Positions 9,058-60,585 of a stretch of 64,000 nt of DNA are shown in pieces. Positions within the stretch are counted from its first letter, which is position 1; every line of letters starts with the position of its first letter. Position numbers and translations under genes: made by a program. The notes under the pieces are model-generated. The model worked only from the letters and a program-made list of their open reading frames with translations. It had not been told where the DNA came from and searched no databases. This DNA comes from Selaginella moellendorffii (Eukaryota; Plantae; Lycopodiophyta), in the NCBI RefSeq assembly GCF_000143415.4, contig NW_003314294.1, positions 243,402 to 307,401 on the forward strand, in the 5' to 3' direction.

Positions 9058-9911
9058 AATAACCACTTTATAATCCAAACTTTATATTAATATATCAATT
9101 ATACACTGCCATCACAATACATTAGCAACTAGTGAAATTTGCTCTTTTGACTATGATATGCAGTAGATCCAGAGCTAGGTATAGCCACAGCATCACGATC
9201 TAGGGAGAGCTGCAGGCTTGCAGCAGCAAACAGTCATGATTGAGAGTTACAGTGGATACACCTACAGGCAAACCAAAGTACAAGTATCTTTTTATCACTA
9301 TATATTGGTCATTACATTCATGTGGACTTACGCATATAAAAACCTAAAAAAATTTAAAATATGAGAGAGCTGAAGATGCCAAAACACTTCAAAGTTTTCT
9401 AAATGGAATTTGAAGAAAATATTTTAGGGGGGTGTGATATGTATTTGAGAAGAAAATCACAAATATATTACAAGATTCTTCAATAAGTAGTTCAAAAGTT
9501 TAATTGCAGTATCTTGTTTTGAAATATTCTGTTTATTAAATAGTTTACTGATGCAGTAATGCTTGGTTTGCTTAACAATAGTGCTTACTGTTTAATAATC
9601 TAACTGTAAATTTTAAATACAAGATTAATCTTATTATTTATCAACCATTAGATGTTAAAATAAATGAAACATACTTGGAAGTAATTAGTAATGTTTATAA
9701 ATTATAAACATATTTATAAATTATAAATTCAATATTAATCTAAATGAATAAATTAATTTGAAAATATAATAAAATACACTTGAAAGCTCTGTAGCAAAGT
9801 CAGGCTTATGAGATCCAAATGTACAGCTAGAATATAATATCTGTATAGTGGGACTTTGATAGCTGTTTGATTCACTCTTATATATAAGTTAGGGTTTTTG
9901 GGTTAATATTA

Positions 9912-9916
<5 letters not shown>

Positions 9917-9953
<37 letters not shown>
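9917..9953. repeat. (TA)n microsatellite, duplicated at ~18525-18562
   Basis: Seen directly. Confidence 0.95.
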
Positions 9954-16900: not shown

Positions 16901-18520
16901 GTTTTTTTTTTCTAATCTCTCTTCTATTTGGCCTTTGTGGGTGTGGGTGATTCGCATGATCCACAGGGAGCTGCTGGGCTTTCTCGGCGATTGCATCGAT
17001 CGAGAGTGCACACTTTCTGGCGACGAAGGAGCTCGTTTCTCTGTCCGAGCAGCAATTGATAGACTGTGACACGGTAGACCAAGGATGCCAGGGTGGGTTT
17101 CCGGAGGATGCGTTTAAGTTCGTGGTGGAAAACGGTGGTGTCACCACGGAGGAGGCCTATCCATATACGGGATTTGCAGGCAGTTGCAACGCGAACAAGG
17201 TTGGTATACTTCACTAATTATTTCATATTATAGCTGTTTTTTGTTCTTTAAAGAATAAGGTGGTGGAGATCACTGGTTATAAAGACGTCACAAAGGACAG
17301 TGCTGACGCCCTGATGAAAGCAGTCTCCAAAACTCCCGTGACCGTTGGCATCTGCGGCAGCGACCAAAACTTCCAGAATTACAGAAGTGTAAGAAAATCT
17401 CAAATATTATTTCTATTTATTTCTAACTTAATTACATCGTTTTCCAGGGAATTCTTTCTGGTCACTGCAGCAATTCGCGGGATCATGCGGTCTTGGTCAT
17501 TGGATATGGAACCGAAGGTGGGATGCCCTACTGGATCATCAAAAACTCGTGGGGAACTTCCTGGGGGGAGGATGGATTCATGAGAATCAAGAAAAAGGAT
17601 GGAGAAGGGATGTGTGGGATGAACGGACAGTCATCATACCCCACTACTTCGTAAAATAACCACTTTATAATCCAAACTTTATATTAATATATCAATTATA
17701 CACTGCCATCACAATACATTAGCAACTAGTGAAATTTGCTCTTTTGACTATGATATGCAGTAGATCCAGAGCTAGGTATAGCCACAGCATCACGATCTAG
17801 GGAGAGCTGCAGGCTTGCAGCAGCAAACAGTCATGATTGAGAGTTACAGAGCTAGGTGGAGTGGATACACCTACAGGCAAACCAAAGTACAAGTATCTTT
17901 TTATCACTATATATTGGTCATTACATTCATGTGGACTTACGCATATAAAAACCTAAAAAAATTTAAAATATGAGAGAGCTGAAGATGCCAAAACACTTCA
18001 AAGTTTTCTAAATGGAATTTGAAGAAAATATTTTAGGGGGGTGTGATATGTATTTGAGAAGAAAATCACAAATATATTACAAGATTCTTCAATAAGTAGT
18101 TCAAAAGTTTAATTGCAGTATCTTGTTTTGAAATATTCTGTTTATTAAATAGTTTACTGATGCAGTAATGCTTGGTTTGCTTAACAATAGTGCTTACTGT
18201 TTAATAATCTAACTGTAAATTTTAAATACAAGATTAATCTTATTATTTATCAACCATTAGATGTTAAAATAAATGAAACATACTTGGAAGTAATTAGTAA
18301 TGTTTATAAATTATAAACATATTTATAAATTATAAATTCAATATTAATCTAAATGAATAAATTAATTTGAAAATATAATAAAATACACTTGAAAGCTCTG
18401 TAGCAAAGTCAGGCTTATGAGATCCAAATGTACAGCTAGAATATAATATCTGTATAGTGGGACTTTGATAGCTGTTTGATTCACTCTTATATATAAGTTA
18501 GGGTTTTTGGGTTAATATTA

Positions 18521-18565
<45 letters not shown>

Positions 18566-31613: not shown

Positions 31614-31669
31614 TAAACCCTAACTAAGCCCTAGAAATTTACAACCTTTAAGCCCTTGCCTTTAGGGTT
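31614..31669. promoter_or_regulatory. Telo-box motifs in the divergent promoter upstream of RPL1
   Basis: AAACCCTAA at ~31615 and TTAGGGTT at ~31662. Telo-boxes are typical of translation-gene promoters. Confidence 0.45.
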
Positions 31670-32020: not shown

Positions 32021-33387
32021 ATGGATCCAGCGCACATAATCCCTCTCGTATTCCCGGTACTTGGCCGCATTGGAGGCCTCGGACGAGGCATCTCTGCGAG
32101 ATTTCAAAGCGGGAGATCAGCGCGTAGCTGGGATCGAGGATACTCACAGCGCGATCTTGGCCTGCTTGGACGACGTCGTGGCCGTGGGCGAGGCCTCCAT
32201 CGCCCAGATTTTAGGGTTTCCATGGCCCGGGAAGCATATTCGTTGTCACGCCCGTACAACAAAGCATATTCTCTGATAATTGTGCAAAAGCATATTCCTT
32301 GTCATATCCGTACAAAATGCATATTTCCCTGATACACTTCCTTGTACGGCAGGGTATGGGTGGATGATGAAGTGGAAATGACCGCTTTCTTTCCACATCG
32401 AGAACAACAAGAAAATCCTAACGAGGATGAGGACGATAGCGATGGCGATGCCCGCGCTCGTCCTCCTCCTCTCTCCGCCTGGATCCTGCGATTCAAGCCA
32501 GTGATCGAAGGTGAGTCTGATCAGGGAACCACGAGGAGCGGGCGAATGCGTCGATCGCGCTCCTGCTCCTCGGTTCTACTGCCCGAATTCTCGATCAAGC
32601 GGCCCCAGCACGAAGAATGCCACGAGCCGCTGGAGGATTGGCTGCTCCACCGGCATTCCATTTCTTCCCCTTCTTTCTCGCAGGATCCCGCCAAGAAATC
32701 CCGTTCCAATTCCAGCAGCCTCTCTCGCAGCCTCGACAGGAGCTCCTTCCTCCTCGCTCCCAATTCGTCGGCGCGCGAGGCTCCACGGCGTATCATTCGA
32801 GGGTTCGTCGCCGCCACGGACAGCCAAGAACCGCAAGATTCCCTTTGCGGCTTTCTCAAAGCCAATGCTCCACTGCCATACAGCAGCTATCAAGGATCCA
32901 ATCCTCGCGACAAACAAGGATTGGATCCAGCAAAAGGATTAGCATCCCTGCTCACCGAATCATCCACAAGTAAGCTCGATTCCAAAAAATCGGATTTTTA
33001 GCTTCGATTCCTTGCACAGATCGTCACCAAGAACAATCCCAGCATGAGCTTCATCAGGTAGGCAAAACTTCGAGGAGAAAAATCTCATTTTGCCTGGTTT
33101 GCTTGCAGCAATCTGGATCAAACCAGGAGAACTTTGTCCATCCGGAGTCTGTTCTAACCCGACCGCTCTACACCAAACGGCAATCCATCCGCAAGGAAGG
33201 GTCGTGGATCAACCGATGGTCGGACGAAAACTTGGCCTCGGTCTCTGGCCTCGGCTACGTTCCCAGCGCCGCTGCCATGGCGATCATCAGTAAATCTTAC
33301 ACGAGCTCACTCACAACACCGTCATGGTCTAACTCGATCGAGGCCTGGCAGTCGGACGCCGACTCCAAGGATGCTCGTCGCTGGTAG
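32021..33387 (+). CDS. Hypothetical Ser-rich spliced protein; start and exon structure uncertain
   Basis: GC-rich open frames at 32061-32276, 32342-33001 and 33103-33387, with plausible splice sites (ag at ~32352, ~33019, ~33108). No family recognised. Confidence 0.45.
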
Positions 33388-37034: not shown

Positions 37035-39141
37035 ATGTCTTACTACTCCTCCTCCTCGAGCTTTGGAGCCGCGGATTCGATGCCCAAGAGCGCCCAGCAG
37101 CAGCTGGAATCACTCCCCGATCCCAGCGATCGCGACCAGGACGACGATTTCGTGGCCGGGCTGGTGGAGCAAATGGCGCACTCGATGCTGGACGAGGAAG
37201 AGTGCGGCGGGGACGAAGGGTACCCCGCCACTACTGCCGCCGCAACACCGCTGTGGCCGCCGCTCCACGAAACTCAGGTGTGCTAAGAGCTTGAACCGCG
37301 AGCGAGCGAGCGAGAGAGAGAGAAAAGGAAGGAATGTAGCTTAGATTTGGTGTTGGGTTCTTCTTGTTTGTCTCTTCCTTGCTTGTTTCTTGCTGTTCTT
37401 CTCCGTAGCGAGAGATTCTCATCGATTCTTTGGTGGTTTTTTTTTTTTTCTTTGTAGCGGAGAAGCGGGTGGAGCTCCACGAAATCCAGCCCCAGCCCCG
37501 CGGTATCGCCGCCGACGCCGCTCCACCACTTCGGTCACGAATCCGAGCTGCCGCCGCCGCGCGGCAGCGATGCGTGGGAGCTGCTCCATCTGGCGGCGCA
37601 GGAAGTGATGCGTCTCAAGATGGGCGGCGGCGGCGGCGGCGGAGAGGTTCCTTGTTCTTCTTCGTGTTCTTTCTCTTCTTGTTCTTCTTCTTCCTCTGCC
37701 GGCTCTTGCTCCTCGCCCCCATCTTCGTCGAGTTCCTTGTTTTCTCGCGACGAGATCCGAGCTTACAACCGAGCCGCGTCAATGTACCACTCGATCGGCA
37801 CCGCCAAGAACAGTGGCATCGTCGAGTGCTGTGGAAGCAAGCCTGTTGGTTGTGCGTTTGGGCAGCAGCAACTTGACTGGAAGCAGCAGCAGCAGCAGCG
37901 AAGTACTCAGCGCCATTACCAGGTATGATCGAGCTCTTTCTTCGCAAAGTTCGTTTTTTTTTTTTTCTGTTTTTTTTTCCGTGTTCTTGGGCGTGCTCTG
38001 CCAGTTTCTCTGGTGTGTTGAGAATCGTACAGACATTTTGATTTGTTTGATGGATCGTTATCTTTGTTGGTCGCCCAGAGCGCGTGACCCTGTGGATTTG
38101 TGGATTCATGCGTGTTTGCTTGTACATCGATCTCCTCGCTTTCACTTTTCTTTGTCAAGTTTAGTGGTGTTTTTGTTAAGTTCGTTCTTGGTTTCTCAGT
38201 GCGCGTTCCTTAGATTTAGATTTGATCTCTGTGCTTTCGAGGGCGATGATTAAATGGGATTTGATGCGTTGGTGCTACTTTTGTCAGTGTTGCTTTAGAT
38301 TTTCTTGGTGTTTGAAAGTTTAGATTTTTAATGCTTGTTCTTTCTCGTGGTTCTTCGTTCGTTTGGAACTCAAGTTTTTGCAATGATTCCTTGCGCAGAA
38401 TGCTTTGAATCCAGCAGCTGGGATCGTTCCAGTCGCCTGGAACAGGCGAGCTCGATCACCTCGATCTCTCCAGCAGCAGCAGCAGCAAGCTCGACATATC
38501 GCGAGCAGCCGGAACTTGCATCAAACTTCTTCCACTCGATCATCAAACATCCACCACTCGGCTGGATCATCGCTCTTCTCGTCACAATGGCCAGCGGCAT
38601 CCAGCGTAAAGTCTCACACCACCGCCACCACCGCTAATGGCGGCACTGGAATGCGAGCCGTGTTCTTGAGAGGCCCCGGATTCGGAAGCAGCACCTCCAA
38701 CGGGACGGGAGTGTTTCTCCCGCAAGCCACCGCTCCCACTGCCAGCAGCAATCGCGATCCACAAAAACGAAAGCCACGTAAGTGAAGTGATCATCTCTTG
38801 ATGGTCAAGAAGTTCTCACCGTTTTAAATTGCTCTTCGTTTGATCCATCCATCCAGCTTGCTCCACGGTGCTACTCCCTTCCCGGATAGTCGAAGTTCTC
38901 AACCTCAACGTCGATGATCTGGAGTGCCAACCGCATCCATCGCTTGGTACTACTGGTAAGTTCTCGTAGAGTTCTTCCCAAGTTCTTGGATTGACATAGA
39001 TTTTGGTGCTGGAACGTCGCAGATCACTCGAGCAGCGATGATTATCTGAGCGTCCATCTCTCCAAATCCTACTCGGCGTGCTCTCCAACGCGGTGGCACT
39101 CCACTGCGGAGCACGCTCTCCCAACGGAGTGGACTTACTGA
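37035..39141 (+). CDS. Plant-specific uncharacterised protein (family often annotated 'TIP41-like'), multi-exon
   Basis: Motifs DDFVAGLVEQMAHSML, GMRAVFL..GTGVFLP, CSTVLLPSRIVEVLNLN and terminal LPTEWTY-stop. Confidence 0.8.
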
Positions 39142-39475
39142 GCTAGCGAGCTCGAGCTAGCGCATCACAGCCGTCCATCCAGAGGCCATCCTCACCGGAG
39201 CCGTCCGATCCCTCGTCATGTGGATAGAAATAAGTACCAGGGTCTCTTCTCACTTTCATACAAACTCTATGATAGCTTGTAAGATTTTTTGAATAAAACA
39301 TAGTCCTTTGAGTATATTCTCTAGATGGATATTTTCTTAGGGTTCTTGGGATAAAAGAGCCCTAAAATCAATGGAATATCCATTAGGGCTAGATCGAGTT
39401 CGCTGTCCGATCGCATCCTAGCGAGGCATCGCATCGCGTCCTCTCTCCGGCCAGGTCTTGGAATCTAGGGCTGCT

Positions 39476-40852
39476 ATGGATAATCTCGCGGCAGCCTCGA
39501 TGGATAATCTCGCTGCGGCGCTCGCCAGCGGCGGCACCCAGCCCAACATTCTCGGCCCCGTGGTGCCCCTCCTCAAGATCCTGTGTATGTGCATGGTCGG
39601 CCTCCTCCTCACGCATCCACGAATCGGCGTCCTCGGCCCGGATTCCTGCAAGCTCCTCAGCAAGCTCGTCTTCGCGCTCTTCCTCCCCTGCCTCATCTTC
39701 ACGGAGCTGGGCAAATCGGTCACTCCCAAGAACATGCGCGACTGGTGGTTCATCCCCGTCAATGTCCTCGCCAGCTACTTGATCGGCTGCGTCGTCGGCT
39801 ACCTCGTCGCGATCCTCTGCCGCCCGCCGCCCCGGCTCTTCCGATTCACGGTCGCCATGACAGGGATCGGCAACACCGGCAATCTCCCCCTCTCGATCGT
39901 CGGCTCCGTGTGCCATGGCTGGAATCCATTCGGCAAGCAGTGCAAGCAATCCGGGGTGGCCTACGTCTCCTTCGCGCAGTGGGTCGCGGTGATCGTGCTC
40001 TACGTCTTCGTCTATCATATGCTGGAGCCGCCGCGGGATTACTACTGCTACATCGATGAGCTGGGTCGCGGCGAGGAGATCATCGATCAAGAGGGTGGTG
40101 TCCAGGAAGAGGAAGAACAGGAGATCCAGGCGGCCCAGATGCCCGATTTCGTGGAGGCCGAGTGGCCGGGCGTCAAGGACGCCGGGACCGAGGAGACGAG
40201 GACGCCATTCCTGGATCGGATCTTCCGGCGCGCGTCTTTCAACGAGAGGAGGGATCCGGTGGTGGAAGATCACGAGAGAGTGCGGTGCTTGCGCGAGCCG
40301 AGGGTGGTGAGGAAGATGAGGATCTTGGCGGAGAGGACGCCGCTGCAACACATGCTCCAGCCGCCGACGGTGGCGTCGCTGCTGGCGATCCTGGTGGGAT
40401 CCGTGCACTACTTGCAATCGGTGGCGTTTGGCGAGGGTGCGCCGCTCGAGTTCTTCACGGATGCGCTCACGATCCTGGGCAATGCGATGGTTCCTTGCGT
40501 GCTCTTGGTTCTCGGGGGGATGTTCTCCGGAGGTCCGGCAAAATCGGAGCTGGGGCTGCGCACCACAGTCGGGATTTGCGTCGCCCGGCTCGTCGTGCTG
40601 CCCGCGATTGGGATTGGAGTGGTGGTGGCTGCCAATCGCGGAGGATTTCTCCCCCAGGGCGATAAGATGTTCCATTTCGTGCTGCTGCTCCAGCACGCCA
40701 TGCCCAGCTCGATCTTGATGGCCGGATTGACGAGCGTGAGGGGATATGGCGAAAAGGAAGCATCGTCAGTGTTGTTCTGGCAGCACATCTTCTCTGTGGT
40801 GTCGCTCGCGGGTTACATTGGGATCTACTTCAAGTACATTAGCTACATATGA
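39476..40852 (+). CDS. PILS: PIN-LIKES auxin carrier (PILS2-like), intronless
   Basis: LLSKLVFALFLPCLIFTELG, WWFIPVNV, GIGNTGNLPL, AMVPCVLLVLGG and FVLLLQHAMPS. Two hydrophobic blocks flank an acidic loop. Confidence 0.93.
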   Translation: MDNLAAASMDNLAAALASGGTQPNILGPVVPLLKILCMCMVGLLLTHPRIGVLGPDSCKLLSKLVFALFLPCLIFTELGKSVTPKNMRDWWFIPVNVLASYLIGCVVGYLVAILCRPPPRLFRFTVAMTGIGNTGNLPLSIVGSVCHGWNPFGKQCKQSGVAYVSFAQWVAVIVLYVFVYHMLEPPRDYYCYIDELGRGEEIIDQEGGVQEEEEQEIQAAQMPDFVEAEWPGVKDAGTEETRTPFLDRIFRRASFNERRDPVVEDHERVRCLREPRVVRKMRILAERTPLQHMLQPPTVASLLAILVGSVHYLQSVAFGEGAPLEFFTDALTILGNAMVPCVLLVLGGMFSGGPAKSELGLRTTVGICVARLVVLPAIGIGVVVAANRGGFLPQGDKMFHFVLLLQHAMPSSILMAGLTSVRGYGEKEASSVLFWQHIFSVVSLAGYIGIYFKYISYI

Positions 40853-40941
40853 ATCAAGGATATTTTAAGGCTGATTTTAGGGCTCTTGAGCTTACTCTGT
40901 TTTTAGGGTTCTTGACTCTTTTGCCCAAAAATTTGGGGGCA

Positions 40942-42892
40942 ATGGGCATGGGCGTGGAGGGCGTGAAAGCGCTGCAGCTGGACGATGATGCTTTCATCGC
41001 ACTGCTCCGGAAGCTCATCGGCGAGGCGAAGCATCTCCAGAACAATCCGCCGGAGCTGATCCCGCGGGAGGATCTGGCGGCGCGGCATGTTCTTGAGGTT
41101 TTGATGCCGCTCAGCACCGAGTATGGCGGCCCGCTTGTGGTGAAGCATGTCATCTACACGGAAGGGAGGGGGAATGTGATTGTGGAGTATCCAGGCACGG
41201 AAGTTGGGAAGATCGTCTCCTTCGTTGGCTGCCATATGGACGTTGTCACTGCGAATCCGGACGACTGGGTGAGCTTGAAAATTTGGATTTCTTCTTCGCA
41301 TTCTCGGATCCGATCTTCGAGACTTTCTAAGAGGCTGGAGTTCTTCCATTGCTCTGATGAGGTGCCTTTGTTCTTTGTTGTTTCCTTCGCAGGAATTTGA
41401 TCCTTTTAGTCTGAGTATCGATGGTGACAAGCTGAGAGGACGAGGAACTACTGATTGCCTGGGACATGTAGCGCTTGTCACTGATCTCATGAGGCAGCTC
41501 GCGGAGAAGAAACCCAAGCTTAAATCGACCGTGGTGGCAGTTTTCATTGCGAACGAAGAGAATTCATCCGTGGTTGATATTGGAGTCGATGGTTTAGTGA
41601 AAGACGGGCTTTTGGACAGCTTAAAGAACGGTCCACTGTAAGTGTCGCTGTTTTTTTTTTTTTTTCTTCTTCTTCTTACTCTGGTTTTGGTTTTGATCTG
41701 CAGGTTTTGGATAGATACAGCAGACAAGCAGCCGTGTATAGGGACTGGCGGCATGATCTCTTGGAAGCTCACGGCTTATGGAAAGCTTTTCCATAGCGGC
41801 CTTCCACACAAGGTTCGTTATTTCTCTTCTTCCAACTGAATTCTAGAGTAGGTTTATGTAGGCCATTAATCCGCTTGAGCTTTGTATGGAAGCTATGAAG
41901 GAGATCCAGACGCGGTTCTACTCTGATTTCCCCGCACATCCAAGTGAAGAACGCTATGGTTTTGCAACACCATCCACGATGAAGCCCACGCAGTGGAGCT
42001 GTAAGTATTCTGTGGAATACATGACATTTTTTACCTTGAAACTCGTTTTTGAAGATCCCGGAGGTGGAGTGAATCAGATCCCTGGCCAGTGCACGATTTG
42101 TGGAGACTGCAGGTCCGTTTTTTTTTATGTTTTCTCTAGTAAATGCTCACATAATGCTGATCTATCGTAGGATCACACCATTTTACAAGTGAGCCTCTTA
42201 AGTTTGACGATCGGATCAGTTGACTAAACTTCTGGTGTGACTAGTGTCCAAGACGTAGTAAAAAAACTCAAGAGCTACGTGGATGACATCAACGCGAATA
42301 TTGAAAAGCTTGGAGTTAGGGGCCCGGTTTCTAAGTATACACTACCAGAGGAGGGCCTGAGAGGAAGGTAAGCTCTTTTGTGTAAGTTTTGGAATCTTGA
42401 CAACGCATTTTCTCGTTTTTTATCGTATTTCCAGATTGACTATGGAATTCGATGAGATGATGATGTCTGGCGTGGCGTGCAATCTTGATTCCCCGGGCTT
42501 CCATGCGCTGTCCAAGGCCACTGAAGAAGTCGTGGGGGTTGTCAAGCCTTACTCCATCACGGGCTCTCTTCCTTTGATTCGTGAATTGCAGGTATGTGTT
42601 TTTCCTTTTCGTTGTTTCGTTCTCTGACGATCTCTTTCTTTGTATTCGTCATGCACGACTGATGCTCGATCACAGGATGAGGGCTTTGATGTCCAGACCG
42701 CAGGCTATGGTAAGCAGCTTGAGCGTTTCGTGTGAAGCTTTCAGTTTTGATATGGATATGCCCCGTTTCTCAGGATTGATGTCCACATACCATGCTCGTA
42801 ACGAGTACTGCTTGCTGTCTGATATGCGCCAGGGCTTCCAAGTTATGGCCAACATCATCTCGCGCCTAGAAGAGTGTCGCCTAGAAGAGTGA
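40942..42892 (+). CDS. NAOD: Acetylornithine deacetylase (M20 peptidase family), ~10 exons including an ~18-nt micro-exon at 42171-42188
   Basis: GCHMDVV, LRGRGTTDCLGH, FIANEEN, GKLFHSGLPHK, YSITGSLPLIRELQ and YHARNEYC. Canonical short introns. Confidence 0.93.
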
Positions 42893-43270
42893 AGTGAGCT
42901 ACAGGGTTATGTCTATAACGCAGAACTTTGGCTATGGATTTCACAGTACCAAGTCCAGCTGATATAGCTTTCTTGCAAATATTCCAGGAAAACCTTTCAA
43001 TCCATAAGTTTCTTTTGCCTCTCGTGCTGCTTTGAGGATCAGCAGCGCAAGCATATGCGACTGCAAATCTGAACAACTGGGTAAGCTTTTTCTGGATCTA
43101 GGTTTTATCTCGCATTCTCTAGAGCGATCTTCGCAATTTTCTTTTAGTGATCTGTGTAGCGCTTGTAAAAACACAAGCTGATTTTTACTTCTACGTTTGA
43201 GAACCCTTTGAAAATGGTTCTTTTTTCTTTTCTTTTTGAGAGAGAGAGAAAGAGCGAGCTTTGTGGCGCC

Positions 43271-44125
43271 CAATGGGGCATGGGACCCCTCTCCTCGGTA
43301 AGAAGGCGAATCCGGATGACTGGGTAAGCTGGAAAATTTGGTTTTCTTGTTCGCATTCTCGGATCTGATCTTTGAGAATCTCTTTTTTCTGTTCCAACTG
43401 GCTAGAGTTCTTCCATTTCTATTGGAAGTTTTCTTTTTTTTTTCTGATGAGGTGCCTGTGTTCTTTGTTGTTTTCTTCGCATGAATTTGATCCTTTATCT
43501 ATGGTGACGAGCTAAGCGGACGAGGAACAACTGAGGGACATGTAGCTCTTGTCACTGATTTCATGAGGCATCGAGGGACATAGGGCATAGCAACCGGCAT
43601 GATCTCTTGGAAGCTCACGGCTTATGGAAAGTTTTTCCATAGCGGCCTTCCACACAAGGTTCGTTATTTTCTCTTCTTCCAACTGAATTCTAGAATAGGT
43701 TTATGTAGACCATTAATCCGATGGAGATCCAGACTCATTTTCCCGCACGTCCAAGTTATGGTTTTGGGACACTACGTGGAGCTGTAAGAATACATGACGG
43801 TTTTAACCTTGAAACTCGTTCTTGAAGATCCCGGAGGTGGGCTGAAGCATATCCCAGGTTGGTGCACGATTTGTAGGAATTGCAGCTCCGTTTTTTATGT
43901 TTTTCTCTAGTAAATGCTAACATAATGCTGACTTTTCAGATTGACTAAACTTCTGAAGACGTCTACGTGGATGACAGCTGGCTACGGTAAGCAGCTTGAC
44001 CGTTTTGTGTGTTCCCGTTTCTCAGGATTGATGTCCACGTACCATGCACAGAGCGACATCTTGCTATCTGATATGCCCCAGGGGTTCCAAGTTATGCCAA
44101 CATAATTTCTTGCTTAGAAGAGTGA
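43271..44125 (+). pseudogene. Deleted NAOD duplicate (exons and introns retained in pieces)
   Basis: Colinear pieces match NAOD 40941-42892, e.g. MISWKLTAYGKFFHSGLPHK. Many deletions. Confidence 0.9.
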
Positions 44126-44201
44126 ATATGTTCATATGTTTATGTTATATGTGTCTATAACGTTTAACATGATTAGAATATGTGGTTTAGGTCAGGCTCA
44201 T

Positions 44202-45161
44202 ATGGATCTGATACCATGGTGGGAGATCTTTTCGCGTCTGGACAATTGGAGCATAGTCCGTGCAAGCAGTGTGTGTAAGTCATGGAGGGACATAATCCAA
44301 TCCCCAGACTTCAAAGCCAGGGGTGTGATGGATCAAGGGGTTTGGATTCTCACTTATGTCAATGATGTGTTGAGGGCGTGGTGTCCACTCTCAGGCTTTT
44401 TTTTGGATGAGCCTTTCCCAAGCTTTGAGTGTCCTTATAGAGTTTTGGCTATTGAGCATGGGCTGGTGCTTTTGCGCTGTGGATCAAAGAGCTATGTTGG
44501 CAATCCCGTGCTCATGGAATGGAAAGAAGTGTCTCCCATTGACAAGATATTTCTCAAGACCGATAAGGTGGATGAAGAGATCCTATGGTCTCACAAAGTA
44601 CTATTTAGCGTTGATCGCCAGAGGTACTCCATATATGTTATCAATAGCGACTGGTTGAACGAAATTTCTGTTATATATGACTCATCCGTGAGTGCTTGGA
44701 GAATCGATCCATCTCTTGGTCCGGCTCTAGAAGCTAGAGCTAAACCACAGTATTCTTTAGCGATAAAGGAGCCGAGAAGTTACATCAGTCATTTCGAGTA
44801 TAAGGGGCAAAAAACGCTTGAGGTGATTACTAACAACGAGTTCAGTGTCTGGGAAGAGAGGGATCCATCAATTCGAAAATGCATGAGCGACATTCATAAG
44901 ACGTTTGAGGTGGATAAGAGTCGGTGGAACTTGGTGGCAAAAATTGGCATACCTAAGCGCGAAAAATATAATTGTCACTACCTAGAAACCCTGTATATCT
45001 TCTGGTCCAAAGAAGCCCGCCCAAAACTTCGTCCTTTTGTCGTGGACCTGGAAACTAAAACCGCATATGTTTTCCCACGCAAGTACAGGCGTGACCGATT
45101 TTCGAGCACTGTTTATATTCTGATTGGAAAAACCACCCCGGTTCCAGACCAACTGAAATAA
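44202..45161 (+). CDS. F-box protein, lineage-specific, single coding exon
   Basis: N-terminal F-box MDLIPWWEIFSRLDNWSIVRASSVCKSWRDII, and HGLVLL..YVGNPV (F-box-associated-like). Confidence 0.8.
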   Translation: MDLIPWWEIFSRLDNWSIVRASSVCKSWRDIIQSPDFKARGVMDQGVWILTYVNDVLRAWCPLSGFFLDEPFPSFECPYRVLAIEHGLVLLRCGSKSYVGNPVLMEWKEVSPIDKIFLKTDKVDEEILWSHKVLFSVDRQRYSIYVINSDWLNEISVIYDSSVSAWRIDPSLGPALEARAKPQYSLAIKEPRSYISHFEYKGQKTLEVITNNEFSVWEERDPSIRKCMSDIHKTFEVDKSRWNLVAKIGIPKREKYNCHYLETLYIFWSKEARPKLRPFVVDLETKTAYVFPRKYRRDRFSSTVYILIGKTTPVPDQLK

Positions 45162-45245
45162 CCATTGTTATTTGGAATGCCTCGTCCACTTTCTAAATTT
45201 GTTCTAGGAAGCAAAAATAGAAAAATTACTAATATTCAATGCTTG

Positions 45246-45812
45246 GATATACCTAGAATACATTTGAATATTCTAGGATATTTTACCATTTAATGGTTGT
45301 TATTCATTTAGATTAATCTTGTATTTATAACATGTTTATAATTTATAAACTTTCTTAAACCCTTTCTAATATATTCTTTTTTATTCTATCATCTAATGGT
45401 GCAATAAGATTGATCTTGTATTTAAAAATTACAAACATGCTTATAATTATAAACTTTATTTGATCAATTGAATTAAAAATTAAAAATAACACTACTATTA
45501 AGAAAACCAAGCATTTCTACATGCAAAGCATAGCAACTAATTATATATTAGATATATTTAAATAATTTGCTATGCATTGCATGTATTAATTTAATTGATA
45601 TAAACATGTTCATAATTTATAAACACAAGATTAATCTTATTCCATATCAACCATTAGATGGTAGAATAAAAAATAATATACTAGAAAGTGTTTAAGAAAG
45701 TTTATAAATTATAAACATGTTTATAAATTATAAATACAAGATTAATCTAAATAAATAACAACCGTTAGATGGTAGAATATCCTAGAATATCCAAGCGTAT
45801 TCTAGGTATATT
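45246..45812. mobile_element. Foldback/MITE with ~180-bp inverted arms
   Basis: atatacctagaatac..ttctaggatatt..gattaatcttgtatttataa is mirrored at 45620-45812. A related half-copy lies at ~9560-9750 and ~18170-18360. Confidence 0.8.
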
Positions 45813-46019
45813 CACTACCATCCTACAGGTTTAACCAAAAATCTTAAAATTATTTTTAAAATCCAGAAATTTTACAGTGAGGTATTCTTTTTTAAGCTTA
45901 AGAGAGCCTGCCATAAACGATGTACTTAGAATGATAAAATGATGATAGACATTATAAGACCGAATAGTAATACAAGGGAGACATAAGACCACTATACCTA
46001 CCTTCTACACTCCTTACAC

Positions 46020-50120: not shown

Positions 50121-51189
50121 ATCTTTTCCATAGCAGCCTTCCACTACAAGGTTCATTATTTTCTGAATTCTAAATCCCAGGCTTTAAACGTTTTCCTACA
50201 ACACTAACTTCTCTACAATGTGATGATTCGAACACAATTATAAAGATTCGTTTTTTGGATTATGCCAGTAGTGATCAAATTCTGCAAGGAAAAACACTAA
50301 GACCTTGAAGTCCCTTCTTTCCTTGAGATCTCGTTCACAAAGCGACACCAGTTCCAGCTAGTGAGCAGCACAACAACAAGGCCACTGACACAAAAGCAAT
50401 AATCCAACTTGCATTTTTGCATCCATCGGTCTCATGCTTCTAGTTAAGCACCTCAAGACTATCAAAACATGATCTCTCTCTCTCTCTCTCTCTCCTAATT
50501 GATTGATTCAAATAATCCCCAAAAGACACCAAGGGACACATCTTTTCATTACTGTTTTTATTCTAATTGGAAACACCACCCTAGTCCCAGGCCAGCTGAT
50601 GTAGTAGCCAATATTGCCTGCAATATGGGCAACCCAAGTCTTGAACCAAGTTGATCTCTATGTTGCTAATTTGTGGGACATCAACCTGGAGTGACAAGAA
50701 GTATAAGAAATCTGTCAAGAGAAGTGTAAAAGAACAACTCTTTGTAATAAACTTGGAGTTCACTTTTTTTAGAAACCTAGTGCATTTTACTTAAGGTAAT
50801 ATTAGAAGTATAATATACTTTAGGGATAAATTTATTTTATTTTTAAAACACTTTTTTTGCTTAAACTATATTAGCTATGTTTTTAATGAGTTGGTGACAG
50901 TATAATTCAGCTAAAATCACACTCACCTTGTTCAATTATCTTTCAGAACCACACTCAATGAGAGTATATCTTTGTGAATAATTAAAACCGGTTAGTTTAT
51001 ACTGCCAAAAATAAAATAATCTTCTTACACTCACAAAATAAAAAAAACAAATCTATATCAATCTATAGTTTAAACTTTCTTGGATTAACTCTTGACCTCT
51101 TAGCTCACCTCAAGAACAAAGCTCGCCAGCTACCATAGACAAACAAAGAATACATGGGAGGAGGATCCACAAGACATGGTGGTGGGGCA

Positions 51190-54109: not shown

Positions 54110-54800
54110 CGCTGGAGCCCACTCCAAGTGAAGATGAAGCCCACGCAGTGGACCTGTAAGTAGTGTTTGTGGATTCCATGACATTTTTAAGCTTGGAACT
54201 CGTTCTTGAAGTTCCAAGAAGTGGAGTGAACCAGACTCCCAGGCCCGTGCACAAGCAGGTTCGTTTTAACGTTTTTGTCTAGAAAATGTTCACGTATGTT
54301 GATCTTTCTGTAGGATCACAAGGATTGAATCATGACTCGTGTATGACATCAACTCGAATATTGAAAAGTGAGCCATGTATACACTACCAGACGAGGGCCT
54401 GAGAGGAAGGTAAGCTGTGATGTTTAAGCTTTGGAATCCTGGCAACGCATTTTCTCTTCTGTTATAGTTTTTCCAGATTGAGTATGGAATTCAATGAGAT
54501 GGTGCGTGCAATCTTGATTCCCCAGTGTGCAAGGCGAAATAGAACAAGGGGCCATGTACACACTATCAGGGAAAGGTAAGCTCTCTTTGTGTTTATGCTT
54601 TAAAATCCTTAGTACGTATTTCCTTTTCCAGGTTGACCAGTGAGGTGACGGCACACTGGGGATAATCAAGCCTTACTCCATCCTGGGCTTTTCTTCTTTT
54701 GATTCGTGAGTTGCAGGTACATGTTTCTCCTCGTTCGTCTCTGATGAGATCTTTCTTTGATGCTCGATCGCAGGATGAGCGTACTGCTTGTTGTCTGACG
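54110..54800 (+). pseudogene. NAOD pseudogene fragment (3' half) with an internal duplicated exon/intron junction
   Basis: MKPTQW, ggagtgaaccaga, acactaccagacgagggcctgagaggaaggtaagct and aagccttactccatc match 41970-42680. Confidence 0.85.
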
Positions 54801-56339: not shown

Positions 56340-57125
56340 CCTGGATCCATCGTCCGCCCTCCAGCTCCACGATCTTCCAGCGCCATGCCCCAGATTGTTT
56401 CGCGCGCAGGGTTTAGAAACTCAGATGGACTTCGGCAGGCAAGCTCGACAGCTCTACGAGGAGATGGAAGATTTCGACACGGATGCTTGTTCCTCGAGGG
56501 AAGAAGATCTCTGGCCAGGGGTCTTGAAGTTTGGGGGCGCAGAAAGTCCAAGTTACGGTGGTGATGGATCTCTGCAAGCTTGCGATTGCTGGTCGAGCTT
56601 CACGTTGCTCACGGCTTCGACTCCAACTTCAAGGTCTCATCAACGAACTTGACATGGCCAGGCGAGTTTTCTCCAAAGTGAGAGCTCGTGACGTGGTCTC
56701 TTGGACGGCTTTGATCGTCGCCACCACTACGATTTGGAGTTCATGCGGCTCTTGGCGAGGAAAGACGGATCCGGCGACGGCGTTGAAGCAGCGAAGCTTG
56801 GATCCGGAGGATTTGGAGAAAGGCCAGGAGCTTCACGTAGAGATCACTGCCTCGAGGGACTGCTCTAAATCGCCGGTGGTTCTCAATGCACTCGTCAACA
56901 TGTGCGAAGAGTTGTTCAAGGGGATGAGGGACAAGGGTGGACGATTTTGATCTCGGCTTACGTCGAAGGCTCTACCGCCGAATGATCCTGGAAGGAGTCC
57001 AGCCAACCGAGGTGACGATGCTGGTGGTCATTGCCGCATGCTCGGCTATGGAGTCACCCTGGGAAGGTATAGTCACTGCTTTGACAGACTCTAAATTCTT
57101 CACGGACATGGCTTTGTGCATGTGA
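56340..57125 (+). pseudogene. PPR pseudogene
   Basis: ARRVFSKVRARDVVSWTALI, NALVNMC and MILEGVQPTEVTMLVVIAACS, broken by frameshifts. Confidence 0.75.
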
Positions 57126-58726
57126 TATTGGACTCGATGGTTTAGTAAACGACGGGCTTCTGGACAGCTTAAAGAGGACACGTTCTGAGGTAAGAACTCT
57201 CTATGCCTTCTTTTATTTTCTGACTACGAGTGAGAGCAGCGATTTGCACGTAGTCCATACTCTGTGTAAGCTTAACATTATATACTCTGGATTGTGATCT
57301 CTTTGTCACACATCATCTCTTAAAGCTCTATAGATACGACATATATGTGCAGCCCTTCTGTCCGACTGTACTACGGTTTCCTTAGCAGCACTGTTTGCCT
57401 CTGGAGGTTGGTTGTTTCAGGAAGAACGTCTGGAGCTGATTATTTTCATTATGCTTGCAGCAAATTTGAGAACGATGGTGGGTCGTAAAATATGCAATAT
57501 ATTTATCATCACATATTCCAAATATTAAACATATATTCAGTCATGTGTGGTGATGTGTCTACCGGACTGCTGATGAAAACCCTTTAAAAGGGAAATCCTT
57601 GTAGCATTGCATGGCATCAAAAGTGTCATTGATGGCATAAACTTTTAGATGATCCAAGAAAAAAGAAATTGTAAATTGTGACAATAAGTAGAGGTATTAT
57701 CTGTCTCTAGTTTGCATACACAGTAATAATCTCACTGTTAGCTGTTGTACTTATTCTTCCAGTGCAATTTCAATAAAATTCTACAGCTTCTCTTGTCAAG
57801 TTAATTATTGTTTTTTTCAGACTTTAACAATTTGGCACTTCCCCCAATGATGATAAAAGTCAGTGAATACCAGTACTGATGTAGTGATTCATGTAATTTT
57901 CTTACGACAAGATATGGCAGTGTCTGCTATCCAAGTTGTTGTCACTGTGCCTGTCAAACCTTCGTATGTGCACTGATGAACATAGTGTTACTTGTTTGTG
58001 TAGCTAATCATCGAGCTTTCCAAGTCGTGTTTTGTGCTACTTTTGCAACAGCGGTTTTCTTACCTGTGGATAATGCTAAAGTCAGTAGGCAATCACTGTA
58101 ACTCCTAGCACTGACCTCCAGGATTTTGAGGAATCAAATAACCTGAACTCTTTCCGTTCATTGTCATTGTGGTTTGAAGGTGAGAGTAATCATAACACTT
58201 GACAACTCTAATACGATGAAACTGAAGGCTGTATTGAAATTATTTGTCCTGAGGCAGTGTGCTTTCAACTTTTCACTTGAAGGTATTATTCTACTTTTCA
58301 AAGCATGACTCTTCGTTCCCAGTAATCTTTTTCCTCAGGCCGCTGAAATTGCATACCTCATGCAGTTCTTATTGTACTTCAGAATAAGCTCCCGTGTTAG
58401 ATCCGACCTTGGCTTGGTCATTGTCGAGGCTGAACGCATTTCAGAATATAAGAAAACCACAGGATCCTTAGAAGCGTGTCAAGACGTGGAAATTGGTTAA
58501 AAAAGTAACAAATTATACAAAATGAAATGAGTCGTATGAGTATCTTCCGTGAATACCGCGGGGTAGAGCAGCTTGGTAGAGATCAAGATGATCATTTCCA
58601 CCAGTCCAGGTAGGACAGATTTTCAAGGCTGGTTTCGTCCCTTCACTTGTGAGTTGGCCACAATGGCACAGTTTAAGCCATCAAATCTTCATAAATAGCT
58701 AGTAAAGTAAGAAAATGAATTTTTTG

Positions 58727-59824: not shown

Positions 59825-60585
59825 CGACGCCTGGGTAAGCTTGGTTTGTATCAAAGAATTTGTGATTCTATTTCACATTCTCTAGAGAGATTCCTCTGTT
59901 GCTTTTAGTTGAAGAGAATGACGACTTCCTGGGACTGTCATTGAAAAGCACAACTGTGGTGACCCTTTAACGAATCCACACTCTCATCTTAAGTGTAGTG
60001 AAATGTGGAAGATGGGAAGACCATCTCCTTCGTTGGCTTAAGATCGTATCTGAGATTGCGATTAAGAAAACCAAAACTTCAAGCTCACACAATCGTCCAG
60101 ATTACCAGTGACAACGTCCATATGGAATTGTTCCATTTCCGTTAGGTTTTTTTTATTTTTTTATTTTTAATTTTTATTTTCTTCTGATGCAGTCTATAGA
60201 TGGAAGCTAAAACCGATTGGCTTCCTTCCCTCTTAGTTTTTTCATCTTCAGGTTTTGGAGAGACAAGCAACCAGGTGGCATGATCTCTTGGAAGCTCATG
60301 GCTTATGGAAAGCTTTTCCATAGCAGCCTTCCACTACAAGGTTCATTATTTTCTGAATTCTAGTAGTGCAATTAATCCACTTGAGCTTTATATGGAAGCT
60401 AGGAGATCCAGATGCAGTTCTACTGTGATTTCTGTGGACATCCAAGTGCAACACCATCCACTATAAAGCCCACTGTAAGTGTTTTGTGGATTCCATGACG
60501 TTTCCAGCCTTGAAACTTGTTCTTAAAGATCCATAAACCAGATCTGCAAGATTTGTGGAGATTGGATAAACGTTTTTCTCTAGAC
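59825..60585 (+). pseudogene. Scrambled NAOD pseudogene with an internal inversion at ~60040-60125
   Basis: gggaagaccatctccttcgttggct (+), the reverse complement of 41232-41300, then ggcatgatctcttggaagctc..ttccatagc. Confidence 0.8.

What the first reader, a model, noticed from the sequence alone, without database searches (positions are those of the whole stretch)
40849..40944. PILS stop overlaps an ATG (ATGA) in frame with acetylornithine deacetylase: candidate bicistronic locus
Seen: the PILS TGA (40850-40852) overlaps ATG 40849-40851, which reads without a stop for 31 codons into the NAOD start at 40942. Only 89 bp separate the same-strand CDSs, leaving little room for a 3'UTR, polyA site and promoter. 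PILS is intronless. Established: ATGA overlaps mediate coupled termination-reinitiation in bacteria and some viruses, and polycistronic nuclear mRNAs are known in green algae. Inference: a dicistronic or overlapping transcription unit links an ER auxin carrier to an M20 ornithine-pathway hydrolase. Alternatively the NAOD promoter lies inside the PILS CDS; a telo-box-like TTAGGGTT sits at ~40903.
Basis: partly seen in the sequence, partly recalled or inferred. Interest (0 to 1): 0.75.

Follow-up and report, generated by a model that had tools for sequence, protein, structure and literature searches.

The report
Two tightly packed spikemoss genes
In the spikemoss Selaginella moellendorffii an auxin-carrier-like gene (PILS2-like) ends 89 bases before an acetylornithine deacetylase gene, and the evidence fits two separate, very tightly packed genes whose small gap carries the second gene's promoter elements, not a two-protein messenger RNA.

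Summary
The sequence observation is correct. The PILS2-like ORF (39476-40852) stops at a TGA that overlaps ATG 40849. That ATG stays open for 31 codons, in frame, up to the NAOD start at 40942. The gap is 89 nt and holds TTAGGGTT at 40903.

The window is Selaginella moellendorffii. NCBI already annotates the two genes separately.

The bicistronic reading is not supported:
- The 31-codon extension has no homologue, and NAOD relatives start where ATG 40942 does.
- All 3 substitutions seen in the gap change the putative amino acid, against 19 synonymous to 5 nonsynonymous in PILS.
- PILS has a strong start context and 21 further ATGs before NAOD, so leaky scanning is implausible. Reinitiation after 458 codons would be unprecedented.
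- The gene adjacency is absent in the relatives I could reach.
- The gap has no ATG and carries two telomere-repeat-like boxes. The 12-mer TAGGGYTCTTG occurs three times in 64 kb: twice here and once in the PILS 5' region.

Assembled RNA crosses the gap in three runs. In a fourth, the NAOD contig starts inside the gap at 40890, at 3.4 times the PILS depth.

Most likely these are two abutting or overlapping transcription units, with the NAOD start site inside the gap. Contigs cannot prove transcript ends. Public csRNA-seq and 5'GRO-seq data would settle it. This is an ordinary case for this compact genome.

The parts
39325..39390 (+). PILS 5' region with a telo-box cluster: TTAGGGTT at 39337, its reverse-strand copy at 39365, TTAGGGCT at 39383. 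It includes the 12-mer TAGGGTTCTTG at 39338.
   Evidence: RNA contigs of the upstream gene end by 39299 and the PILS contig of run X17 begins at 39338. A haplotype SNP at 39336 may set that contig start.
39476..40852 (+). Intronless PILS2-like (PIN-LIKES, Mem_trans) CDS of 458 aa, including the TGA stop.
   Evidence: Pfam PF03547, E=2e-83, matching the full-length profile. It is 63-65% identical to the Diphasiastrum proteins and 53-59% identical to proteins named PIN-LIKES 2. NCBI calls the same gene. Its allele is named 'protein PIN-LIKES 2 [Selaginella moellendorffii]'.
40849..40852 (+). ATGA overlap of the PILS stop (TGA) with an ATG in weak context (C at -3, A at +4).
40853..40941 (+). 89-nt T-rich gap without any ATG. 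Proposed NAOD core promoter and 5'UTR, and the PILS 3'UTR or termination zone.
   Evidence: In run X6 the NAOD contig starts at 40890 and no coverage is recorded at 40862.
40877..40889 (+). First telo-box-like module, TTAGGGCTCTTGA.
40902..40915 (+). Second telo-box module, TTTAGGGTTCTTGA. Its first 9 nt are a perfect plant telomere-repeat match.
40942..41267 (+). NAOD exon 1. The start ATG is in strong context (G at -3, G at +4).
   Evidence: (joint 41267^41392).
40942..42892 (+). NAOD (acetylornithine deacetylase-like, M20 peptidase) gene of 442 aa in 10 exons. The exons are 40942-41267, 41392-41637, 41704-41810, 41860-42000, 42055-42112, a micro-exon of about 18 nt at 42171-42188, 42245-42365, 42433-42588, 42673-42708 and 42773-42892.
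   Evidence: GT..AG joints in RNA contigs. The NCBI call has PF01546 and PF07687. A frame check gives 442 codons. The micro-exon bounds are inferred.

Best explanation
These are two independent, same-strand nuclear genes of Selaginella moellendorffii packed almost end to end. NAOD is transcribed from its own start site inside the 89-nt gap, roughly at 40863-40890. That places it just upstream of or between two telomere-repeat-like boxes that act as promoter-proximal or 5'UTR elements, as the same module does in front of PILS. NAOD is translated by ordinary cap-dependent scanning from ATG 40942, the first ATG of that short leader. PILS transcripts end within or shortly after the gap, so the PILS 3'UTR abuts or overlaps the NAOD promoter and 5'UTR. 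RNA-seq assemblers therefore fuse the two genes in some runs. The ATGA overlap and the open 31-codon frame are coincidences with no coding role. Shown: the gene structures, the conservation pattern, the motif distribution and the placement of RNA contigs. Inferred: the exact start site, the PILS poly(A) site and the function of the boxes.
For: (1) NCBI calls two genes, with NAOD starting at 40942.
(2) NAOD relatives start 8-20 residues before the conserved FxxLLxKLIGE block, as ATG 40942 does. None of 93 hits aligns to the 31-residue extension.
(3) All three substitutions seen in the gap (40856, 40862, 40891) are nonsynonymous in the extension frame, against 19 synonymous to 5 nonsynonymous in PILS.
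(4) In run X6 the 2092-nt NAOD contig begins at 40890, which no known haplotype SNP explains. Only 18.2x is recorded at 40856 and nothing at 40862. NAOD depth is 143.5 against 41.6 for PILS. NAOD depth exceeds PILS depth in all four runs.
(5) TAGGG[CT]TCTTG occurs only three times in 64 kb: at 39338 in the PILS 5' region, and at 40878 and 40904 in the gap. TTAGGGTT is enriched in the window, 8 matches against 2.55 expected.
(6) Telo boxes lie mainly in plant 5'UTRs and 5' flanks (PMC3022908) and are enriched in S. moellendorffii promoters (PMC3212954).
(7) The gap has no ATG, as a 5'UTR should, and ATG 40942 has a strong context.
(8) The neighbouring junction is equally tight: upstream-gene contigs end by 39299 and the PILS contig starts at 39338.
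Against: Contigs cross the gap without a break in three runs: X1 and X14 from 40773 to 41269, and X17 from 39338 through PILS into spliced NAOD exon 2. RNA therefore covers every base of the gap, and read-through molecules cannot be excluded. All RNA evidence is from assembled contigs, which cannot show real 5' or 3' ends, strands or single molecules. The X6 contig start at 40890 could reflect an unseen polymorphism or a coverage dip. Higher NAOD depth could also be 3' bias. No canonical AATAAA lies in the gap, so the PILS poly(A) site is unknown. The TATA-like ATATTTTAA at 40860 is lost in the other haplotype (40862 A>C).
Confidence: 0.75

Rival explanations
1. NAOD is still a separate gene, but its start site lies upstream of 40849 inside the PILS coding region. 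Its mRNA would then carry ATG 40849, and part of the protein could be made with a 31-residue hydrophobic N-terminal extension as an alternative isoform.
For: Contigs in X1 and X14 run unbroken from 40773, a break set by the SNP at 40772, into NAOD exon 1. The frame from 40849 is open and in phase.
Against: ATG 40849 has a weak context (C at -3, A at +4) against a strong one at 40942. The extension has no homologue and takes only nonsynonymous changes. In X6, NAOD-level coverage does not reach 40862. Any start further upstream would add out-of-frame ATGs from the PILS 3' part.
Confidence: 0.12
2. This is a true dicistronic mRNA. One capped, polyadenylated PILS-NAOD transcript yields both proteins, with NAOD translated by termination-reinitiation at the ATGA (or at 40942), or by leaky scanning as in green-algal bicistrons.
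For: The ATGA overlap, the in-frame open gap and the lack of ATGs in the gap. The X17 contig spans both genes with NAOD intron 1 spliced out. A UGGGA pentamer lies at 40819, 30 nt before the ATGA, and recalls calicivirus TURBS motif 1 (the comparison rests on my own knowledge, and a 5-mer is expected by chance about 8% of the time). Other tight pairs in this genome were noted by the scan (leads only).
Against: Algal bicistrons have a weak ORF1 start context and depletion of ATGs before ORF2, and they work by leaky scanning rather than reinitiation (PMC11291117). Here ORF1 has G at -3 and G at +4, and 21 ATGs follow it before NAOD against 17.8 expected. Reinitiation efficiency falls with upstream ORF length (PMC11291117), and ORF1 here is 458 codons. 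NAOD depth exceeds PILS depth in every run, and the ratio varies from 1.1 to 3.4. The X6 contig breaks in the gap. The adjacency is not seen at the Diphasiastrum PILS locus or at two NAOD loci. The two functions are unrelated.
Confidence: 0.04
3. This is an artefact: a mis-assembled or mis-called junction, such as a false PILS stop or a wrong NAOD start.
For: None found.
Against: Both assembled haplotypes and RNA contigs from four studies agree on the sequence. The Mem_trans profile is matched to its last position 10 residues before the stop. The NAOD N-terminus matches its relatives.
Confidence: 0.01

Closest known systems
Telo-box (short interstitial telomere motif) promoters and 5'UTRs of plant genes
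   Same: Telomere-repeat-like boxes sit within about 65 nt upstream of the ATG of both genes. They are clustered and enriched over chance, as described for Arabidopsis and rice 5'UTRs (PMC3022908) and for S. moellendorffii promoters (PMC3212954).
   Different: The boxes read TTAGGG[T/C]T on the coding strand and share only the 7-mer AACCCTA with the canonical AAACCCTA. No site II or TEF partner was looked for. The genes are not translation-apparatus genes. The boxes lie in a gap that must also serve the upstream gene's 3' end.
Tandem overlapping or abutting transcription units in compact eukaryotic genomes
   Same: The stop-to-start distance on the same strand is too short for a separate 3'UTR, terminator and promoter. 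RNA coverage is continuous. The two genes have different expression levels.
   Different: The transcript ends are not mapped here, so overlap against mere abutment is inferred.
Green-algal nuclear bicistronic mRNAs (Chlamydomonas, Auxenochlorella; PMC11291117)
   Same: The inter-ORF distance is short (under 100 nt), the inter-ORF has no ATG, and stop/start overlaps do occur in some algal loci.
   Different: ORF1 here is long (458 codons), has a strong start context and is not depleted of ATGs. There is no single-molecule evidence and no conserved collinearity.
Termination-reinitiation at AUGA-type overlaps (bacterial translational coupling; calicivirus and influenza B TURBS; comparison from my own knowledge)
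   Same: The four-base ATGA stop/start overlap, and a UGGGA pentamer 30 nt upstream.
   Different: No TURBS-like structure was tested. The restart product would carry an unconserved 31-residue extension. No cellular plant example after so long an ORF is known to me.

Membership tests
Nuclear bicistronic mRNA of the green-algal type | Both ORFs lie on one capped, polyadenylated molecule, shown by long-read evidence, and ORF2 has no monocistronic form. | tested here: inconclusive
   Only assembled contigs were available. One contig spans both genes (X17) and two cross the gap, but in X6 the NAOD contig starts at 40890. Contigs cannot show single molecules.
Nuclear bicistronic mRNA of the green-algal type | Weak Kozak-like context at ORF1 and a stronger one at ORF2 (PMC11291117). 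| tested here: not met
   The PILS ATG reads gctgctATGg, with G at -3 and G at +4. That is as strong as the NAOD ATG, ggggcaATGg.
Nuclear bicistronic mRNA of the green-algal type | Depletion of ATG triplets upstream of ORF2 (PMC11291117). | tested here: not met
   There are 21 ATGs between the PILS start and the NAOD start, against 17.8 expected from base composition. Only the 89-nt gap itself is free of ATGs.
Nuclear bicistronic mRNA of the green-algal type | Collinearity of the two ORFs conserved in related species. | tested here: not met
   The Diphasiastrum PILS locus has no NAOD within 6 kb either side. Two NAOD loci from unidentified plant assemblies (L010, L011) have no PILS in the 5 kb upstream. 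No other Selaginella species of known identity could be reached.
Termination-reinitiation (ATGA coupling) | The restart ORF encodes a selected protein sequence from the overlapping ATG. | tested here: not met
   The 31-codon extension has no homologue among 93 NAOD exon-1 relatives. All 3 of 3 substitutions in it are nonsynonymous.
Termination-reinitiation (ATGA coupling) | A short upstream ORF, or a dedicated tethering element (TURBS) before the stop. | tested here: inconclusive
   The upstream ORF is 458 codons. There is one UGGGA at 40819, which is within chance. The structure was not analysed.
Telo-box promoter / 5'UTR element | A telomere-repeat motif located in the 5' flank or 5'UTR and enriched over chance. 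| tested here: met
   TTAGGGTT gives 8 matches against 2.55 expected, and 0 of 100 shuffles reach 8. The boxes lie 39 and 65 nt before the NAOD ATG and 93-139 nt before the PILS ATG.
Telo-box promoter / 5'UTR element | Binding by TRB proteins, or an effect on transcription. | not testable with these tools
   Needs ChIP or DAP-seq, or promoter mutagenesis.
PIN-LIKES (PILS) auxin carrier family | A full-length Mem_trans (PF03547) domain, with closest named relatives being PILS2. | tested here: met
   PF03547, E=2e-83, profile positions 4-343 of 343. The allele is named 'protein PIN-LIKES 2' by NCBI. Transport activity and ER location were not tested.
NAOD / M20 acetylornithine deacetylase-like | Peptidase_M20 plus M20_dimer domains, and similarity to proteins named acetylornithine deacetylase. 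| tested here: met
   The called gene product carries PF01546 and PF07687. Exon 1 is 66-72% identical to proteins named acetylornithine deacetylase. Enzyme activity was not tested.

The most novel reading that the evidence does not exclude
A real capped and polyadenylated PILS-NAOD read-through mRNA exists at a useful level. NAOD, or a 31-residue-extended NAOD, would be translated from it by termination-reinitiation at the ATGA after a 458-codon ORF. To my knowledge that would be the first cellular example of long-ORF stop-start coupling in a land plant.
Probability: 0.04. Interest if true: 0.75.

Novelty: new member of a known kind. Interest (0 to 1): 0.25.

Why it matters
As a single locus it matters little. 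Both genes are already annotated, and the ATGA and open frame look coincidental.

Its value is as a clean, checkable example of how tightly S. moellendorffii packs tandem genes. An 89-nt gap must hold one gene's 3' end and the next gene's promoter and leader, and it is built around telomere-repeat-like boxes. Other first-stage notes of this scan (unchecked) report many such 'stop - telo box - ATG' junctions in this genome.

If these micro-junctions prove to be self-contained terminator-promoter modules, they would be of interest for promoter biology and as compact parts for plant synthetic biology. That general question can be tested directly with the existing csRNA-seq and 5'GRO-seq data for this species (PMC11335568).

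Tried and rejected
- **Rfam scan:** 39100-41400 at E<=1 found nothing, so no known ncRNA lies in the gap.
- **Extension homologues:** no hit covers the extension. The few hits with higher query coverage are unrelated upstream read-through ORFs.
- **Conserved adjacency:** the Diphasiastrum PILS locus, a transcript contig of an unknown plant (L003) and two NAOD genomic contigs of unknown plants show no PILS-NAOD linkage. I could not reach another Selaginella species of known identity, so this test is weaker than it sounds.
- **Contig ends as transcript ends:** most are artefacts of haplotype SNP bubbles. The start at 40773 follows the SNP at 40772, 39397 follows the 39391-96 indel, and 39338 follows the SNP at 39336. 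Only the X6 start at 40890 is not explained this way.
- **TATA-like ATATTTTAA at 40860:** it would place a start site near 40890, but the other haplotype loses it (40862 A>C), so I do not rely on it.
- **Depth ratios:** NAOD exceeds PILS in all runs, but the tool warns that contig depth is a poor measure, and 3' bias could mimic this.
- **Literature:** the search for Selaginella moellendorffii plus 'polycistronic' listed 10 of 47 papers, and none of those is about nuclear protein-coding dicistrons in this species.
- **Bacterial-type promoter/terminator scan:** not used, because it is irrelevant for a plant nuclear gene.
- **Joined exon model:** I concatenated the NAOD exons only inside a script, to check frame and length.
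Full report
**1. What is in the sequence**

- A single ORF runs to a TGA at 40850-40852. Its first ATG is at 39476, giving 458 aa.
- The A of the last sense codon (ATA) plus the TG of the stop form ATG 40849-40851.
- That ATG opens a frame of 31 sense codons that runs straight into ATG 40942, the start of an M20-peptidase gene.
- The two coding regions are 89 nt apart (40853-40941).
- TTAGGGTT is at 40903-40910, and a second box, TTAGGGCT, is at 40877-40884.

**2. Identity of the genes and the organism**

The upstream ORF matches the whole Pfam Mem_trans profile (PF03547, E=2e-83). Its best relatives are two Diphasiastrum proteins (63-65% identity), followed by proteins named PIN-LIKES 2 from mosses and seed plants.

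The exact protein is encoded on GCA_000143415.2 scaffold GL377598.1, so the organism is Selaginella moellendorffii. There NCBI calls three same-strand genes: one at window 37035-39141, PILS at 39476-40852, and a 442-aa gene at 40942-42892 with Peptidase_M20 and M20_dimer domains. The allele on the second haplotype is named 'protein PIN-LIKES 2'.

Exon 1 of the downstream gene is 66-72% identical to proteins named acetylornithine deacetylase. The two genes are therefore already annotated as separate genes.

**3. RNA evidence (runs found)**

No raw-read RNA run was on offer. I laid Logan contigs from four runs of four different studies. They are RNA-derived, because they carry GT..AG joints at all NAOD introns.
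- In X17 one 2099-nt contig runs from 39338 through PILS, the gap and NAOD exon 1, and is spliced into exon 2.
- In X1 and X14 contigs run from 40773 to 41267/41269.
- In X6 the PILS contig stops at 40722. A low-depth piece (18.2) still covers 40856, and nothing is recorded at 40862. A 2092-nt NAOD contig of depth 143.5 (PILS: 41.6) begins at 40890 and runs to 43191.

Comparison with the second haplotype shows that most contig ends are assembly bubbles at heterozygous sites. The start at 40773 follows the SNP at 40772. The start at 39397 follows the 39391-96 indel. The start at 39338 follows the SNP at 39336. The X6 start at 40890 is not explained by any known variant.

RNA thus covers the whole gap in some samples. 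In at least one sample the abundant NAOD RNA does not reach back to 40862. NAOD depth exceeds PILS depth in all four runs, at ratios of about 1.1 to 3.4.

The tool warns that a contig across two genes shows no single transcript, and that contig depth and ends are weak evidence. I treat all of this as suggestive only.

**4. Is the 31-codon frame coding?**
- A word search with the extension plus exon 1 found 93 relatives. They align to exon 1 only, and their N-termini start 8-20 residues before the conserved FxxLLxKLIGE block, as ATG 40942 does.
- Between the two haplotypes the gap has two substitutions (40856 A>G, 40862 A>C). A third (40891 C>G) appears in run X17. All three are nonsynonymous in the extension frame, whereas PILS shows 19 synonymous to 5 nonsynonymous. 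The numbers are small but point one way.
- ATG 40849 has C at -3 and A at +4. ATG 40942 has G at -3 and G at +4.
- Shuffled gaps stay open in this frame 16% of the time.

**5. Could NAOD be translated from a dicistronic RNA?**

Green-algal bicistrons have three defining features: a weak ORF1 start context, depletion of ATGs before ORF2, and leaky scanning rather than reinitiation. Reinitiation efficiency also falls with upstream ORF length (PMC11291117).

This locus does not fit. ORF1 has a strong context. 21 ATGs follow it before NAOD, against 17.8 expected. ORF1 is 458 codons long.

A UGGGA pentamer lies 30 nt before the ATGA. It recalls a viral reinitiation motif, but that comparison rests on my own knowledge and the match is within chance.

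**6. What the gap looks like instead**

It is T-rich, free of ATGs, and carries two telomere-repeat-like boxes. The 12-mer TAGGG[CT]TCTTG occurs only three times in the 64-kb window: twice in the gap (40878, 40904) and once in the PILS 5' region (39338). Both regions also share GGATATTTT just upstream.

Telo boxes are known to concentrate in plant 5' flanks and 5'UTRs (PMC3022908). They are enriched in S. moellendorffii promoters (PMC3212954).

The junction upstream of PILS is equally tight. The upstream gene's contigs end by 39299 and the PILS contig starts at 39338. No Rfam family matches the region.

**7. Conservation of the adjacency**

The second haplotype keeps everything, but it is only about 2% diverged. 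The rest is negative:
- The Diphasiastrum PILS orthologue is also a single exon, and has no NAOD within 6 kb.
- Two genomic contigs from unidentified plants carry the closest NAOD exon-1 relatives, and have no PILS in the 5 kb upstream.

I could not reach another Selaginella species of known identity.

**8. Verdict**

The bicistronic, coupled-translation reading is unlikely (about 4%).

The best explanation (about 75%) is two separate transcription units that abut or overlap. The NAOD start site would lie in the gap near its telo boxes, and the PILS 3' end in or just beyond the gap. A start site inside the PILS CDS, with a possible extended isoform, remains a minor rival (about 12%).

Earlier notes of this scan (unchecked AI notes) list many similar tight same-strand pairs with telo boxes in this genome. 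One follow-up on another pair (LpxC and a PPR gene) reached the same 'overlapping genes rather than operon' view. I use these only as context. So the scan has met this pattern before on other DNA of this genome.

Public csRNA-seq and 5'GRO-seq data for this species (PMC11335568) would decide the start-site question.

**9. Limits**
- All RNA evidence is from contigs.
- Exons were searched one at a time.
- The large representative search was not used, because the family scans left no protein open.

Noticed in passing
window 43306-44124; also 54133-54759, 57123-57175, 60007-60532, 50123-50161: Degenerate fragments of the NAOD gene, exons and introns, at about 73-92% DNA identity with deletions. 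They lie directly downstream of the intact gene and are scattered over the next 17 kb. They look like decayed tandem or dispersed partial duplicates, or gene fragments captured by a mobile element. None includes the gap or the PILS end.
   Followed up: partly
window 43191 onward, against L002: The two haplotypes stop being collinear at 43191, in or just after the NAOD 3'UTR. RNA contigs of X1 and X6 leave the window sequence there with loose ends (ATCCCACGGG...) that follow the other haplotype. This is a structural difference between haplotypes right behind NAOD.
   Followed up: partly
window 42171-42188: An NAOD micro-exon of about 18 nt, flanked by GT..AG introns. It appears in RNA contigs of three runs as 17 letters between the joint sides at 42113 and 42245. 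One low-depth X1 contig (depth 11.5) skips it (joint 42110 to 42243).
   Followed up: partly
window 39371-39421: An ATG at 39371 opens a 16-codon upstream ORF in the putative PILS 5'UTR, between the telo boxes, if the start site is near 39338. The second haplotype has indels in 39391-39431 that alter it.
   Followed up: no
window 40664-40704: RNA contigs of three runs have loose ends on both sides of a stretch of about 40 nt near the PILS 3' end. This indicates a paralogous PILS transcript that shares this conserved stretch.
   Followed up: no
window 31616-31669 and 32211: A pair of opposed telo boxes 39 nt apart (31623 on the minus strand, 31662 on the plus strand), with ORFs opening on both sides. 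It is probably a bidirectional promoter. Another box at 32211 lies 167 nt before a 207-codon ORF.
   Followed up: no
window 9864-9920 and 18473-18529: Identical 55-nt contexts around TTAGGGTT at 9889 and 18498. They are two copies of a repeat, possibly the LTRs or ends of a mobile element.
   Followed up: no
window 45200-45900: A very AT-rich block (GC 0.18-0.24) directly after the 341-codon ORF at 44136-45161.
   Followed up: no
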